Both the position numbers and the translations under genes were made by a program. This document shows positions 2,663 to 10,013 of a DNA stretch of 64,000 nucleotides, piece by piece. Source of the DNA: Hyalangium minutum (GTDB taxonomy: Bacteria; Myxococcota; Myxococcia; Myxococcales; Myxococcaceae); contig NZ_JMCB01000013.1 of the NCBI RefSeq assembly GCF_000737315.1, positions 186,001-250,000 on the forward strand. The letters run 5' to 3'. The notes beneath the pieces were generated by a model. That model ran no database searches. It was not told the origin of the DNA and was given only the letters and a program-made list of their open reading frames with translations. Position 1 is the stretch's first letter; every line of letters starts with the position of its first letter.

Positions 2663-2740
2663 CTTGGTGACTGGACTCATCAGCCGATGACTGGAGTCCC
2701 ACGGCACAGGGGCCCCCGGCTGATGACTGGAGTCCCGGGA
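2663..2740. promoter_or_regulatory. Tandem palindromic upstream activator sites (putative bEBP enhancer), array 1
   Basis: CTTGGTGAC-TGGA-CTCATCAGC (2663-2684), GCCGATGAC-TGGA-GTCCCACGG (2683-2704) and GCTGATGAC-TGGA-GTCCCGGGA (2719-2740). The same motif occurs at 5710-5751 and 9925-10013. Confidence 0.75.
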
Positions 2741-2846
2741 AGCCCTCCCGGGAGGTGAACCGGAAGCCCCTCGAAACCGGCGGCTTCCGAGCGTTCCCCT
2801 CTGAAAAGGGCTCCGTCAGGTGGCGACTGTGGGAGGCCGGAGCCGT

Positions 2847-2862
2847 TGGCACACCTCCTGCT
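2847..2862 (+). promoter_or_regulatory. sigma54 (-24/-12) promoter
   Basis: TGGCACACCTCCTGCT has GG and GC separated by exactly 10 nt; it lies about 65 bp upstream of the ATG at 2926. Confidence 0.8.
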
Positions 2863-2925
2863 CTAGCTCATGCACGTCAACTACCCGCTCTCGCCTCCCC
2901 CGAGAGCATGACCCCTGAGGACGCC

Positions 2926-7172: not shown

Positions 7173-9895
7173 GGGCGCGCGGCAGCCACGGACTTCAGCC
7201 AGGTGTCCACCTCGGTCACGCGGGCGGGTTGCCCGGCCTGGGAGAAGCGCTCGCGCGCCCGGGTTGCCTCGCTCCGGGCTTGCGTGGACTGCCCGGAGCG
7301 CCAGAGCGCTTGGGCCAGGGTGAAGCCTGTCTGCGCCAGGTAGGAGTCCGGTGCCGACGTGATGGAGAGGGCATTGCGCAGGGCCTCGATGCCCTCGGGC
7401 ACCCGCCCCAGCCCGAGCAGCGCCTGTCCCACACCATCATAGGAGTACTGGAGCAGCTCGGAGTCCGCAGGCAGGGTTTGCTTGCGGGCCGCGAGGGTCT
7501 CCTCATACAGCTTCAGCGCCTCCTCATAGCGCCCCAGCCCCAGCAGGCACATGCCCACCTCGTCCTGGGCGACGGCGAAAGGGAAGCTCTTGGGGCCGAG
7601 GGTGGCCTTGGCGATGTCCGCCGCCGCGCGTGCGTGCTCCAGCGCCCGGGCGTAGTCCTTCTGCTGCCGGAGGGCCCAGGAGAGCGTGCCGTGGCGTCGC
7701 GCCATGTCCGGGTGCAGCGCGCCCACGGACGCCTCCGTCTGCTTCAGCGCCTCCTCGAGCATCACGACTGCCTGCGAAGTCTCGCCCATCTCGTTCAGCA
7801 CCCGCCCCAGCAGGAAGGTGGTCCGCGCTCGCTTGGGGTGCCCCGGTGCCAGCGCCCGCGCCTGCAGCGCTCGGGCCTGCTCCAGCAGCGTGCGCGCCTC
7901 CGCGAAGGCGCTCTGGGACATGGCCAGGTTGGCTTGGTTCACCCGGACATCCGCCTCCAGCAGGGGATCGCCGCCCAGGCGCCGGATCGTCGCCTCCGCC
8001 AGCTGTCCCCACCCGGTGGCCTGCCCAAAGTGCTTCTGGCCGTCCTCCACGAAGAGCAGCTTGTTGAGGATGGCGACCTTCAGCCGGTCCTCCCGCCCGG
8101 CCTCGGCGTCGAAGATGGCCTGGGAGAGCAGCTGGGCCGCCTCGGGCGAGTGGCCGAGCTGCTCCTGGATCCACCCCAGGTGGAAGCGCAGCTCGGACAT
8201 GAGGGGCAGGTAGCCGGTGGCCAGCACGGGCGCCTCCAACTGTCGTGCCTCCTCCTGCGCAGCGGGGTAGCGGCCCGCGTCCACCCGCGCCCTCACCTCC
8301 GCCAGCCGCTCCTCGAGCCGATCAATCTCCGCGCGCTTGGCCGGATCCGTGGGGCGCCCCTGCTGGTCCGCGAGCGCCTCCACGTCCTCGCACTCCTGGA
8401 GCTGAGGCAGCGCGTGCGCCGCATCCAGGGCCTTCTCCACCAGGGCTCCGTCCGCTCCGGACAGCAGGTCCACCGTGGCCCGCATGTTCTTGCGTCGCCG
8501 CTCCAGGCACACCACCCGCCGGGCGAGCAGCTCCTCGGGCTGCGTCCCGCGCTTGCGGGAGGCCTCGCACACCGCGGTGTTCTGCCGCTTCCACTCCGTC
8601 GCGTAGCCCTCCAGCACCTGCACCACGCGCGAGGCTGTCTCCGCCGCGAAGGGCCGGTCCGTGGCCGCGAATGCCGCCTCCAGCTTCTGGCGCGCCGCGG
8701 GGCTCCAGATCTGCTCCATGGGCGCCCCTGCGCCCGCACACGCCTGGGACTGGTGGTACACGCCCCCGGCCATCACCGACAGCCCCGCCACCGTCGCGAC
8801 AGCCACCCCGGCCCAGAGCCGCCGCTGGGCCCGGCGCTGCTCCTGGGAGAGCGCCTGCAGCAGCTCCTTCATGGAAGGGAAGCGGGCCCCGGACTCCAGC
8901 GCCAGGCCGCGCAGCACCGCCTGCTTCACCCACGCCGGCACCTTCACGTCGCGGGGTGGCTCCTGGATGAGCACCTCGGCCTTGGGGAGCTTCTTGGAAT
9001 GGGAGCCCGGCGGCGTCAGCGGCTGGGTGCCTTCCGGGGTGATCGGCTTGGGAGGAGGCTGGGAGGCCAGGTGGGAGTGCAGCCGGTCGGGATCAAAGGC
9101 CCGCTGGCGGTAGAGCCCCCAGTAGAGCGCGGCGCAGAAGCTGAACTGGTCCGAGCGCGCATCCAGCTCGGAGTCCATCATCTGCTCCGGGGACATATAA
9201 GCAGGCGTCCCCATCACCATGCCCACCTCGGTGATGGTGGTCTCCAGCATCCGGCGATCCGCGGACAGCTGCCGGGCCTGCTCGGGCAGCGGCTCCTCCC
9301 GCCGGGGAGCGCCCACCTGCCGGGCCAAGCCGAAGTCGGTGACGTAGACGCGCCCGTTGCGGCTCAGCAGCACGTTGGCGGGCTTGAAGTCCCGGTGCAC
9401 CAGCCCGGCCTCGTGGGCGGCCTGCAGTCCCTGCCCGGCGGCCAGGAACTTCTCCAGCACCTCGCGCCAGGGATGCCCCCCCTCCTGCTGCAGCCAGGCG
9501 CTCAGCGTGCCCCCGTCCACCAGCTCCATGGCGAGGAACACCTGATCGCCCCACACGCCCACATCGAAGATGGGGATGACGTTGGGGTGGGAGACGCGCG
9601 CCATGGCCTGCGCCTCGCGCAGCAGCCGGGCCCGCGCCTCCTCCGAGTCCGTCTGGATGTCCGGCCGCAGCAGCTTGAGGGCGACCTTGCGCTCCAGGTC
9701 CGGATCATAGGCGGCGTAGACCACGCCCATGCCGCCCTCACCGAGCCGCTTGAGCAGCAGGTAGCGGCCCACCTGCGACATGGGCTGTACCGCCTCACGC
9801 GCGGGCCCCACCTTGGCGCTTGGGGGGTCCGCGAGAGGGGTGCGCGTGTCGTCACCGACACTCCCGGTGTCTGGGTCACTCATTCCGGGGTGCAT
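7169..9895 (-). CDS. Membrane-anchored Hanks-type Ser/Thr kinase with C-terminal TPR repeats
   Basis: GEGGMGVVY, VALK, HRDFKPANV, DFG and GTPAYMSPEQ; TM segment LWAGVAVATVAGLSVMAGG; TPR-like repeats. The stop overlaps the EBP start (GTGA). Alternative start at 9883. Confidence 0.95.
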   Translation of the reverse strand: MHPGMSDPDTGSVGDDTRTPLADPPSAKVGPAREAVQPMSQVGRYLLLKRLGEGGMGVVYAAYDPDLERKVALKLLRPDIQTDSEEARARLLREAQAMARVSHPNVIPIFDVGVWGDQVFLAMELVDGGTLSAWLQQEGGHPWREVLEKFLAAGQGLQAAHEAGLVHRDFKPANVLLSRNGRVYVTDFGLARQVGAPRREEPLPEQARQLSADRRMLETTITEVGMVMGTPAYMSPEQMMDSELDARSDQFSFCAALYWGLYRQRAFDPDRLHSHLASQPPPKPITPEGTQPLTPPGSHSKKLPKAEVLIQEPPRDVKVPAWVKQAVLRGLALESGARFPSMKELLQALSQEQRRAQRRLWAGVAVATVAGLSVMAGGVYHQSQACAGAGAPMEQIWSPAARQKLEAAFAATDRPFAAETASRVVQVLEGYATEWKRQNTAVCEASRKRGTQPEELLARRVVCLERRRKNMRATVDLLSGADGALVEKALDAAHALPQLQECEDVEALADQQGRPTDPAKRAEIDRLEERLAEVRARVDAGRYPAAQEEARQLEAPVLATGYLPLMSELRFHLGWIQEQLGHSPEAAQLLSQAIFDAEAGREDRLKVAILNKLLFVEDGQKHFGQATGWGQLAEATIRRLGGDPLLEADVRVNQANLAMSQSAFAEARTLLEQARALQARALAPGHPKRARTTFLLGRVLNEMGETSQAVVMLEEALKQTEASVGALHPDMARRHGTLSWALRQQKDYARALEHARAAADIAKATLGPKSFPFAVAQDEVGMCLLGLGRYEEALKLYEETLAARKQTLPADSELLQYSYDGVGQALLGLGRVPEGIEALRNALSITSAPDSYLAQTGFTLAQALWRSGQSTQARSEATRARERFSQAGQPARVTEVDTWLKSVAAARP

Positions 9896-9924
9896 CTATC
9901 CCATGGATTCCGCTCGGTGTGCCA

Positions 9925-10013
9925 CCTGGTGACAGGACTCATCACGTGGGGCTGGCGTCACCAGGGCTGCTCCTCGGGGAGCCCAGGGAGCGGCCGGGAC
10001 TGGCGTCATCAGG
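9925..10013. promoter_or_regulatory. Tandem palindromic upstream activator sites, array 3
   Basis: CCTGGTGAC-AGGA-CTCATCACG (9925-9946), ACGTGGGGC-TGGC-GTCACCAGG (9944-9965) and GGCCGGGAC-TGGC-GTCATCAGG (9992-10013). Confidence 0.7.

What the first reader, a model, noticed from the sequence alone, without database searches (positions are those of the whole stretch)
2663..10013. Eight copies of a GCTGATGAC-N4-GTCATCAGC palindrome with conserved array geometry
Seen: sites at 2663, 2683, 2719, 5710, 5730, 9925, 9944 and 9992. Each array has two sites overlapping at a 19-20 bp period (about 2 helical turns), and arrays 1 and 3 have a third promoter-proximal site. The weak half-sites also match between arrays: CGTGGG in the reverse of 2683 and in 9944; CCGGGAC in the reverse of 2719 and in 9992. 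All copies are intergenic. Inference: this is the cognate operator of the adjacent FHA-EBP, giving a direct motif-to-factor assignment.
Basis: partly seen in the sequence, partly recalled or inferred. Interest (0 to 1): 0.8.

Follow-up and report, generated by a model that had tools for sequence, protein, structure and literature searches.

The report
Sigma-54 enhancer sites of FHA regulator
Three clusters of a degenerate 22-bp palindrome each lie upstream of a sigma-54 promoter beside a kinase-linked FHA-domain activator gene in a myxobacterium; they are most likely that activator's binding sites, a new example of a well-known kind of bacterial enhancer.

Summary
The sites are real and not chance, but they are not eight equal palindromes. 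One is perfect (5730). A ninth good copy (5777, 2 mismatches) was missed; it lies in the last codons of the activator gene. The others are one strong half-site (cTGrTGAC) paired with a weak one.

Each of the three arrays has three dyad sites: a pair at a 19-20 bp period plus a third site 36-48 bp away. Each array lies 42-175 bp upstream of a sigma-54 -24/-12 element (2847+, 5636-, 10043+). These promoters drive a Gly/Ala-rich protein, a C39-like peptidase and an SLT lytic transglycosylase.

The adjacent gene encodes an FHA-AAA+(GAFTGA)-HTH_8 activator in an operon with a TPR Ser/Thr kinase. No good copy occurs elsewhere in the 64 kb, so this is not REP-like.

Arrays plus sigma-54 promoters recur next to this activator's relatives in nine other loci from eight genomes or metagenome bins, including Cystobacter, Archangium, Corallococcus and Myxococcus xanthus. 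In close orthologues, sites and promoters are conserved islands in diverged spacer.

Best reading: three dimers per array seed one activator hexamer at a sigma-54 enhancer. Binding is inferred, not shown, and paralogues share a near-identical HTH. New member of a known kind; moderate interest.

The parts
2663..2684 (.). Array 1, distal site of the overlapping pair: CTTGGTGACtggaCTCATCAGC (20.8 bits)
   Evidence: conserved in L089 and L162
2683..2704 (.). Array 1, second site, 20 bp on: GCCGATGACtggaGTCCCACGG (strong left half, weak right half; 14.0 bits)
   Evidence: weak half GTCCCAC invariant in L089 and L162
2719..2740 (.). Array 1, promoter-proximal site: GCTGATGACtggaGTCCCGGGA (16.3 bits); centre 119 bp from the -24 GG
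2847..2862 (+). Sigma-54 type promoter P1: TGGCACacctcCTGCT
   Evidence: 1 mismatch; conserved in L089 and L162
2926..4077 (+). Target gene 1: 383-aa Gly/Ala-rich protein with no Pfam domain and no Sec-type N-terminus
   Evidence: orthologues in L089 and L162
4682..5509 (-). Target gene 2: C39-like cysteine peptidase (275 aa), followed by a terminator-like hairpin with T-run at 4598-4635 (-)
   Evidence: conserved directly downstream of the EBP gene in L089, L162, L002, L164 and L166, and present but divergently upstream of the kinase gene in L001
5621..5636 (-). Sigma-54 type promoter P2: TGGCACaccttTTGAT. The -12 element is TTGA here and TTGC in orthologues.
5710..5731 (.). Array 2, promoter-proximal site of the pair (17.9 bits); centre 86 bp from the -24 GG
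5730..5751 (.). Array 2, the only perfect palindrome: GCTGATGACtgccGTCATCAGC (28.1 bits)
5777..5798 (.). It overlaps the last 8 codons (GDDAGHQE) of the EBP gene.
   Evidence: same position in L089 (TDDPSHQD) and L162, with half-sites kept and spacer varied
5772..7172 (-). FHA / sigma-54 AAA+ (Walker A GETGTGKE, GAFTGA) / HTH_8 enhancer-binding protein. The start codon is uncertain by about 8 codons.
7169..9895 (-). Ser/Thr protein kinase with C-terminal TPR repeats. Its stop overlaps the EBP start (GTGA), which indicates an operon.
   Evidence: the same pair occurs in L001, L002, L162, L164, L165 and L166
9925..9946 (.). Array 3, distal site of the pair: CCTGGTGACaggaCTCATCACG (21.7 bits); 30 bp upstream of the kinase start codon on the other strand
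9944..9965 (.). Array 3, second site, 19 bp on: ACGTGGGGCtggcGTCACCAGG (weak left half, strong right half; 9.5 bits)
   Evidence: invariant in L162
9992..10013 (.). Array 3, promoter-proximal site: GGCCGGGACtggcGTCATCAGG (15.5 bits); centre 42 bp from the -24 GG
10043..10058 (+). Sigma-54 type promoter P3: TGGCACggctgATGCT
10130..10999 (+). Target gene 3: SLT-domain lytic transglycosylase (289 aa) with no Sec-type N-terminus
   Evidence: orthologue in L162, and an SLT homologue (78% identical over the SLT domain) behind a sigma-54 promoter plus sites in M. xanthus L164

Best explanation
The three arrays are upstream activating sequences (bacterial enhancers) of three sigma-54-dependent promoters. 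They are most likely bound through the C-terminal Fis-type HTH of the FHA-domain enhancer-binding protein encoded at 5772-7172.

Site structure. Each site is a dyad of two half-sites, cTG(A/G)TGAC, whose centres lie 10 bp apart, so one dimer would occupy one site. In the overlapping pair, four half-sites fall at roughly 10-bp intervals on one face of the helix.

Assembly. With the third site, each array offers three dimer sites. That is the number of protomers needed for one AAA+ hexamer. The hexamer would loop to RNA polymerase-sigma-54 held at the -24/-12 element 42-175 bp downstream. It would use ATP and its GAFTGA loop to open the promoter.

Output. The promoters drive a Gly/Ala-rich protein, a C39-like peptidase and an SLT lytic transglycosylase.

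Input. The signal is probably phosphothreonine made by the co-transcribed TPR Ser/Thr kinase and read by the FHA domain.

Possible feedback. Array 3 lies 30-118 bp upstream of the kinase start codon, so EBP binding there may also feed back on the kinase-EBP operon.

What is shown: the sequence features, their co-occurrence and their conservation. What is inferred: binding, hexamer assembly, kinase-to-FHA signalling and autoregulation.
For: 1. A sigma-54 -24/-12 match with 1 or fewer mismatches lies downstream of every array in the right orientation. These are 3 of only 4 such matches in 64 kb.

2. The EBP has FHA, Sigma54_activat, AAA_lid and HTH_8 domains, with Walker A, Walker B and GAFTGA intact.

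3. Motif copies of 14 bits or more occur only in the arrays within the window. Sites of 20 bits or more number four in 1.35 Mb of other EBP loci, three of which are one conserved coding-region site in paralogue loci.

4. Phylogenetic footprint. In alignments with orthologues L089 (EBP 84% identical) and L162 (90%), 79-90% of half-site columns and 81-88% of promoter columns are invariant. Other intergenic columns are 26-62% invariant. A 66-bp indel between array 1 and its promoter is tolerated in L089.

5. Loci not used to build the PWM show the same unit next to the EBP gene:
- L162: all three arrays.
- L165, Cystobacter fuscus: two arrays of three sites.
- L168, Archangium minus: three sites.
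- L166, Corallococcus coralloides: two pairs.
- L164, Myxococcus xanthus: one clear site plus a 9.7-bit neighbour.

6. Twelve of 16 promoters have exactly three sites of 9 bits or more. The nearest site is 42-153 bp from the -24 GG, most often 83-88 bp.

7. At the site inside the EBP's last codons, half-sites are conserved while the 4-bp spacer, and hence the amino acids, change. That is the pattern expected for a DNA-binding constraint.

8. Three tandem interrupted palindromes upstream of a sigma-54 promoter are the experimentally shown architecture for the M. xanthus EBP PexR (PMC12754779).
Against: - No binding or expression data exist for this protein.
- The recognition region GN(I/V)SRASREAGIDRVYLRKLLRKHGL is nearly identical in paralogues that have no array in their flanks (L003, L004, L007, L082, L085). 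Genomes of this group carry several paralogues. A paralogue could therefore bind these sites as well, or instead.
- P2 in this genome has TTGA instead of TTGC at -12, which may weaken it.
- The third-site spacing (36-85 bp) is not helically phased.
- The nearest site of array 3 is only 42 bp from the -24 element, which is short for looping.
- The rest of this genome could not be scanned.
Confidence: 0.78

Rival explanations
1. The arrays are sigma-54 enhancers, but they are bound by a different activator: a paralogous FHA-EBP with the same HTH encoded elsewhere in the genome, or hetero-oligomers of paralogues. The motif-to-factor assignment to the adjacent gene would then be wrong or incomplete.
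For: The HTH region is nearly identical across relatives of 66% identity or more, including those without nearby arrays. Several paralogues of 70% identity or more occur per genome, for example four or more in Hyalangium versicolor.
Against: The array-plus-promoter unit is physically linked to this EBP lineage in the window and in nine other loci (L001, L002, L005, L089, L162, L164, L165, L166, L168), even though the target genes and flanking genes differ. In three orthologues one site is embedded in the EBP gene's own 3' end.
Confidence: 0.13
2. The palindromes act as transcribed RNA hairpins (terminators or 3'-end stabilisers after accD and the EBP gene), or as REP-like dispersed extragenic palindromes, rather than as protein-binding DNA.
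For: Arrays 1 and 2 directly follow stop codons. Array 2 folds significantly better than shuffled sequence as RNA (z = -3.8).
Against: - Arrays 1 and 3 fold no better than shuffles (z about -1).
- No T-run follows any site.
- Array 3 lies between two divergent gene starts.
- Most sites are poor palindromes with one conserved weak half.
- No copy occurs in the other ~50 intergenic regions of the window or in the unrelated control loci among the 1.35 Mb of other EBP loci.
- No Rfam family matches.
Confidence: 0.03
3. The sites are operators of the Crp/Fnr-type regulator encoded 1.7 kb upstream (318-968). Proteins of that family bind 5-N4/N6-5 palindromes.
For: A cNMP-binding HTH_Crp_2 protein is encoded at 318-968. 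The geometry ATGAC-N4-GTCAT resembles FNR-type sites (my recollection of TTGAT-N4-ATCAA).
Against: No homologue of that protein is found in the flanks of L001, L002 or L005, which carry arrays. The sites lie 42-230 bp upstream of sigma-54 promoters, which need an AAA+ activator. They do not sit at -41.5/-61.5 of sigma-70 promoters, and no sigma-70-like promoter was found in 2600-10200.
Confidence: 0.02
4. The resemblance between the arrays is a leftover of local duplication of a regulatory region and has no present function.
For: Arrays 1 and 2 share 42 nt at 76% identity (D10). A 24-nt copy of the SLT ribosome-binding region lies between array 1 and P1 (D8).
Against: Sites are conserved far above the surrounding spacer across species. 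They also recur in front of unrelated genes (M4 protease, thaumatin-like) in other genera.
Confidence: 0.02

Closest known systems
PexR enhancer of Myxococcus xanthus (katB promoter; PMC12754779)
   Same: Three tandem interrupted palindromes lie upstream of a sigma-54 promoter and are bound by a myxobacterial bEBP. The regulator gene lies near its targets, and the same protein also down-regulates another promoter.
   Different: The sequence differs (CACCG-n6-CGGTG against cTGrTGAC-n4-GTCAyCAg). PexR senses through a GAF domain, not an FHA domain with a partner Ser/Thr kinase. The sites here are mostly asymmetric (strong plus weak half) and two of them overlap at a 19-21 bp period.
NtrC (GlnG) enhancer at glnAp2 of enteric bacteria
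   Same: Multiple dyad sites for a Fis-type HTH dimer lie 100-150 bp upstream of a -24/-12 promoter. Cooperative binding nucleates the AAA+ oligomer, and position and orientation are flexible (textbook knowledge, recalled).
   Different: The NtrC site is TGCACC-N5-GGTGCA (recalled). NtrC is activated by receiver-domain phosphorylation by a histidine kinase, not through FHA and a Ser/Thr kinase.
FHA-domain enhancer-binding proteins of M. xanthus (Jelsbak, Givskov & Kaiser 2005, PNAS 102:3010; cited as ref. 43 in PMC4320627)
   Same: The domain architecture is the same (FHA - sigma-54 AAA+ - HTH). The M. xanthus DK1622 protein P0056 is 73% identical and sits in the same kinase-EBP-C39 arrangement.
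   Different: I found no published operator or target set for this subfamily in the searchable library. The 2005 paper itself is not held.
REP/BIME-type repetitive extragenic palindromes
   Same: Imperfect palindromes in intergenic DNA, some directly after stop codons.
   Different: This is not a dispersed high-copy element. There are nine copies in three clusters, all tied to sigma-54 promoters, and none elsewhere in 64 kb.

Membership tests
Sigma-54 enhancer (UAS) of an NtrC-family EBP | Lies upstream of a -24/-12 (TGGCAC-N5-TTGCW) promoter, in cis, at roughly 50-200 bp | tested here: met
   P1 2847(+), P2 5636(-) and P3 10043(+) each have 1 mismatch. Site centres lie 42-175 bp from the -24 GG.
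Sigma-54 enhancer (UAS) of an NtrC-family EBP | Two or more dyad-symmetric sites able to hold EBP dimers | tested here: met
   Three dyad sites per array in the window, and in 12 of 16 promoters across loci.
Sigma-54 enhancer (UAS) of an NtrC-family EBP | A cognate EBP with an AAA+ GAFTGA domain and a C-terminal DNA-binding HTH | tested here: met
   Pfam Sigma54_activat 4.5e-64 and HTH_8 6.7e-05. GAFTGA and Walker motifs were read in the translation.
Sigma-54 enhancer (UAS) of an NtrC-family EBP | Sites and promoter conserved in orthologous regions while the spacer diverges | tested here: met
   79-90% invariant columns in half-sites against 26-62% in other intergenic columns.
Sigma-54 enhancer (UAS) of an NtrC-family EBP | The EBP binds the sites, and transcription depends on the EBP and on sigma-54 | not testable with these tools
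   Needs EMSA or footprinting, ChIP, and reporter or knockout experiments.
REP-like repetitive extragenic palindrome | Many dispersed copies in unrelated intergenic regions of the genome | tested here: not met
   No copy of 14 bits or more outside the three arrays in 64 kb. The background rate in 1.35 Mb of other loci is about 1 per 54 kb for sites of 14 bits or more (my count from the listing). The whole genome was not available.
Intrinsic terminator | GC-rich hairpin followed by a T-run at a gene's 3' end | tested here: not met
   None of the terminator-like hits coincides with a motif site; two weak 5-bp-stem hits abut sites of array 2, and the only strong one is at 4598-4635(-). Arrays 1 and 3 are not unusually stable as RNA.
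Crp/Fnr-type operator | Co-occurs with the Crp-like regulator and sits at -41.5/-61.5 of a sigma-70 promoter | tested here: not met
   The Crp-like gene is absent from the flanks of L001, L002 and L005. No sigma-70-like promoter was found in 2600-10200.

The most novel reading that the evidence does not exclude
The arrays may mark the regulon of a conserved myxobacterial module (TPR Ser/Thr kinase, then FHA-EBP, then sigma-54). Its targets are wall- and protein-degrading enzymes that lack Sec signals: SLT transglycosylase, M4 protease, thaumatin-like protein, C39-like peptidase and a Gly/Ala-rich protein.

These targets share an N-terminal S/T/P/A/Q-rich leader ending in a DGFE-type motif. That would make them a co-regulated set of substrates for a non-Sec export or maturation route, with the always-adjacent C39-like peptidase as the leader-processing enzyme. 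They would be candidate effectors for contact-dependent prey lysis; the T3SS* effectors of M. xanthus are still unidentified (PMC12075869).
Probability: 0.2. Interest if true: 0.75.

Novelty: new member of a known kind. Interest (0 to 1): 0.45.

Why it matters
Myxobacteria encode dozens of sigma-54 activators and about a hundred Ser/Thr kinases. For the FHA-domain activators, the partner kinase, the DNA site and the target genes are largely unknown.

This locus offers all three on one 8-kb stretch. The same unit is present in the genetically tractable M. xanthus (CP080534.1, about 126.8-144.2 kb). A kinase, FHA-EBP and promoter chain can therefore be tested directly.

The targets are signal-peptide-less lytic enzymes. 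That hints at a role in cell-wall remodelling or predation, which gives the motif practical value for regulon prediction.

The mechanism itself, dyad sites nucleating an AAA+ hexamer at a sigma-54 promoter, is textbook.

Tried and rejected
- An exact-sequence look-up of the EBP found nothing. The accD look-up placed the window in GCA_000737315.1 contig JMCB01000013.1. I recall this as Hyalangium minutum DSM 14724; no tool confirmed that.
- The genome-contig scan returned mostly distant EBPs. Only L001 and L002 keep the kinase-EBP operon.
- A 20.7-bit site conserved in L003, L004 and L084 lies inside a coding region (VMSPVIK) and was discarded.
- Paralogue loci L082, L085 and L167 show no arrays.
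- A literature search for the motif with 'enhancer binding protein' returned only eukaryotic C/EBP papers.
- Searches on FHA-EBPs found no operator. The Jelsbak 2005 paper is not held.
- The Rfam scan of 1-12000 found nothing near a gathering score.
- I looked for T3SS or other secretion genes in the window and found none; the rest is housekeeping.
- The precomputed faint HrpK1 hit on the L165 690-aa target was not reproduced on the 543 residues available.
- No helical phasing rule was found for the third site (spacings 34-85 bp across loci).
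Full report
**Observation**

The window is a high-GC (about 69%) myxobacterial chromosome segment. An exact match of its accD product places it in GCA_000737315.1, contig JMCB01000013.1. I recall this accession as Hyalangium minutum DSM 14724, but no tool confirmed it.

All eight listed coordinates carry motif-like sequence. Quality is very uneven. Against GCTGATGAC-N4-GTCATCAGC, the site at 5730 is perfect. Sites 2663 and 5710 have 4 mismatches, 2719 and 9925 have 5, 2683 and 9992 have 6, and 9944 has 8.

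About 60 other places in the window have 5-6 mismatches. The weaker sites are therefore credible only because of where they lie.

The set as a whole is far beyond chance:
- With 3 or fewer mismatches, 2 matches are found against 0.03 expected.
- For the core GRTGAC-N4-GTCAYC with 2 or fewer mismatches, 30 matches are found against 9.7 expected.
- With a half-site PWM, every window site of 14 bits or more lies in the three clusters.
- In 1.35 Mb of other EBP loci, only four sites reach 20 bits. Three of those are one conserved coding-region site in paralogue loci.

**Anatomy**

Gene order, from Pfam and ORF analysis:
- accD, 1787-2635 (+)
- array 1, 2663-2740
- a 383-aa Gly/Ala-rich protein, 2926-4077 (+)
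- a C39-like peptidase, 4682-5509 (-)
- array 2, 5710-5798
- an FHA / sigma-54 AAA+ / HTH_8 activator, 5772-7172 (-)
- a TPR Ser/Thr kinase, 7169-9895 (-), whose stop overlaps the activator's start
- array 3, 9925-10013
- an SLT lytic transglycosylase, 10130-10999 (+)

Downstream of every array, in the direction of the adjacent gene, is a sigma-54 -24/-12 element with one mismatch to TGGCAC-N5-TTGCW. These are 2847 (+), 5636 (-) and 10043 (+). Only four such matches exist in the whole window. No sigma-70-like promoter was found in the region.

The activator carries Walker A, Walker B and the GAFTGA loop.

Each array has three dyad sites. Two form a pair at a 19-20 bp period, which places four half-sites about 10 bp apart. 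The third lies 36-48 bp away. It is promoter-proximal in arrays 1 and 3 and promoter-distal in array 2. In array 2 it overlaps the activator's last eight codons.

**Comparative evidence**

The closest loci are L162 (EBP 90% identical, metagenome) and L089 (84%). They keep all the arrays they cover.

Spacing is almost unchanged. Distances from site centre to the -24 GG are:

| Array | Window | L162 |
|---|---|---|
| 1 | 119 / 155 / 175 | 120 / 155 / 175 |
| 2 | 86 / 106 / 153 | 86 / 106 / 153 |
| 3 | 42 / 90 / 109 | 42 / 92 / 111 |

In the alignments, 79-90% of half-site columns and 81-88% of promoter columns are invariant. Only 26-62% of other intergenic columns are invariant. L089 lacks 66 bp between array 1 and its promoter. 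That shows the distance flexibility typical of enhancers.

They appear to be maintained rather than decayed.

For the site inside the coding region, the half-sites are kept while the 4-bp spacer, and so the encoded residues, change: GDDAGHQE against TDDPSHQD.

More distant relatives show the same unit in front of different genes:
- Archangium MAG L001 and A. minus L168: three sites, a sigma-54 promoter, then an M4 protease.
- Cystobacter fuscus L165: two arrays of three sites, in front of an M4 protease and a 690-aa protein.
- Myxococcus qinghaiensis L002 and Corallococcus coralloides L166: a thaumatin-like protein.
- Hyalangium versicolor L005: a repeat protein.
- M. xanthus L164: one clear site plus a 9.7-bit neighbour, TGGCACacctgCTGCT, then an SLT gene.

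L162, L164, L165, L166 and L168 were not used to build the PWM.

Twelve of 16 promoters have exactly three sites of 9 bits or more. The nearest site is most often 83-88 bp from the -24 GG.

**Mechanism**

The best reading is a classical sigma-54 enhancer. Three dimers of the activator bind the three dyads. On a signal they assemble one AAA+ hexamer, which loops to the closed promoter complex and opens it using ATP.

The regulatory input is most likely phosphothreonine produced by the co-transcribed TPR kinase and read by the FHA domain. The kinase-activator pair is conserved in L001, L002, L162, L164, L165 and L166.

Array 3 overlaps the region just upstream of the kinase gene. C. coralloides has a site pair upstream of its kinase gene with no recognisable sigma-54 promoter. 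Autoregulation is therefore plausible.

Sequence features and conservation are shown. Binding, hexamer assembly, signalling and autoregulation are inferred.

**Rivals**

- A paralogue may bind instead of, or together with, the adjacent activator. The HTH is nearly identical in relatives of 66% identity or more, and these genomes carry several paralogues. This is the main residual uncertainty, at about 0.13.
- RNA hairpin, terminator or REP-like element. This is rejected for four reasons: only array 2 folds better than shuffles (z = -3.8, against about -1 for arrays 1 and 3); no T-runs follow the sites; no copies occur elsewhere; and there is no Rfam match.
- The nearby Crp-like regulator. Rejected because it does not travel with the arrays.
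- Non-functional duplication remnants. Rejected by the cross-genus conservation.

**Comparison with known systems**

The architecture matches the NtrC-type enhancer. It matches especially well the M. xanthus PexR sites, which are three tandem CACCG-n6-CGGTG palindromes upstream of a sigma-54 promoter (PMC12754779).

The protein belongs to the FHA-domain EBPs described in M. xanthus by Jelsbak et al. 2005 (cited in PMC4320627). I found no published operator for them.

This is a new member of a known kind. It is a sound, testable motif-to-factor prediction, not a new mechanism.

**Beyond the finding**

The proteins behind these promoters come from at least five unrelated families. All lack a Sec-type hydrophobic N-terminus.

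Thirteen of 16 carry a [DT][GSQ]F[EDSG] motif at residues 36-76, after an S/T/P/A/Q-rich stretch. Only 2.7% of background ORFs carry it.

A C39-like peptidase gene is encoded in seven of these loci, directly after the activator gene in six of them. This suggests, without testing, a shared leader and a dedicated processing or export route.

**Score**

Interest is 0.45. However, the locus gives a complete kinase, FHA-EBP, operator and target chain that is conserved in a model organism.

Noticed in passing
window 2926-4077, 4682-5509, 10130-10999; L001 7581-9395; L002 9602-10804; L005 7558-8979; L162, L164, L165, L166, L168 targets: Proteins encoded behind the array-controlled sigma-54 promoters fall into five unrelated families: SLT, C39-like, M4, thaumatin-like and Gly/Ala-rich. 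They have no Sec-type N-terminus. They share an S/T/P/A/Q-rich leader followed by a DGFE/DSFS/TGFE-type motif at residues 36-76 (13 of 16 targets against 12 of 447 background ORFs).
   Followed up: partly
window 4682-5509 (-); L089 880-1686; L162 9639-10466; L164 9431-10201; L166 9402-10334; L002 7383-8306: A stand-alone C39-like peptidase is encoded directly downstream of the EBP gene in six loci, including M. xanthus. By eye it keeps the C39 Cys motif (TDTNCGAAAAVM) and the His...DP motif (HWVVVDG...VKDP); the motif knowledge is recalled. It might process the shared leaders, several of which have GG or AG just after the motif.
   Followed up: partly
window 4157-4507 (+): The annotated 116-aa ORF matches only parts of a 336-aa Trigger_C-domain protein of L162 (43% and 62% over two pieces). 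It looks like a decayed remnant. The 270- to 424-aa unknown family present in L162, L165, L166 and L002 is missing from the window.
   Followed up: partly
window 2795-2818 and 10107-10130: A 24-nt direct repeat at 83% identity (TCCCCTCTGAAAAGGGCTCCGTCA / TCCTTTCTGAAAAGGACCCCGTCA). The second copy is the SLT ribosome-binding site and start region. The first lies between array 1 and P1, inside the 66 bp that L089 lacks. This may be a trace of regulatory-region duplication.
   Followed up: no
window 5621-5636 (-): Promoter P2 has TTGA at the -12 element, whereas both orthologues have the canonical TTGC. The C39 promoter may be weakened in this genome.
   Followed up: partly
window 5590-5604 (-): A small inverted repeat, CCCTG-N5-CAGGG, lies just downstream of P2 in the predicted 5' leader of the C39 mRNA. 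It is conserved in L089 and L162, along with further leader blocks (GGGAAGAGG, CCGCAGTGCAC).
   Followed up: no
window 2636-17061; L162 whole locus: The kinase-EBP module, with an SNF2 helicase gene (11206-15084), lies between accD and a FolC-like Mur-ligase gene (17062-18423). In L162 the same module sits among Kelch-repeat genes near an ISL3 transposase. Its genomic position is therefore variable.
   Followed up: no
L164 11571-13235 and 3090-5018 (M. xanthus CP080534.1): A fused VipA/VipB-like sheath gene lies divergent from the sigma-54-driven SLT gene. An AHH nuclease plus Imm11 immunity pair lies just upstream of the kinase gene.
   Followed up: no
L166 5024-5066: In Corallococcus coralloides a strong site pair (13.3 and 26.2 bits, 21-bp period) lies about 80-120 bp upstream of the kinase start, with no recognisable sigma-54 promoter. 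This may reflect autoregulation of the kinase-EBP operon.
   Followed up: partly
window 1-1725, 37335-40031, 47703-49061: Cyclic-nucleotide signalling genes are frequent in the window. They include a CHASE2 cyclase, a cNMP-binding Crp-like regulator and a metallo-beta-lactamase/PDEase_II-type gene upstream of accD, plus two more cyclases further on.
   Followed up: no
window 54207-54222 (+): The fourth sigma-54-like match with 1 mismatch (TGGCACtcgcgGTGCT) lies inside an MCP gene and has no motif sites nearby. It is probably a chance match.
   Followed up: partly
window 15085-17061, 31907-35477, 49062-52414: These stretches have no ORF with the high third-position GC typical of this genome. 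They were not examined.
   Followed up: no
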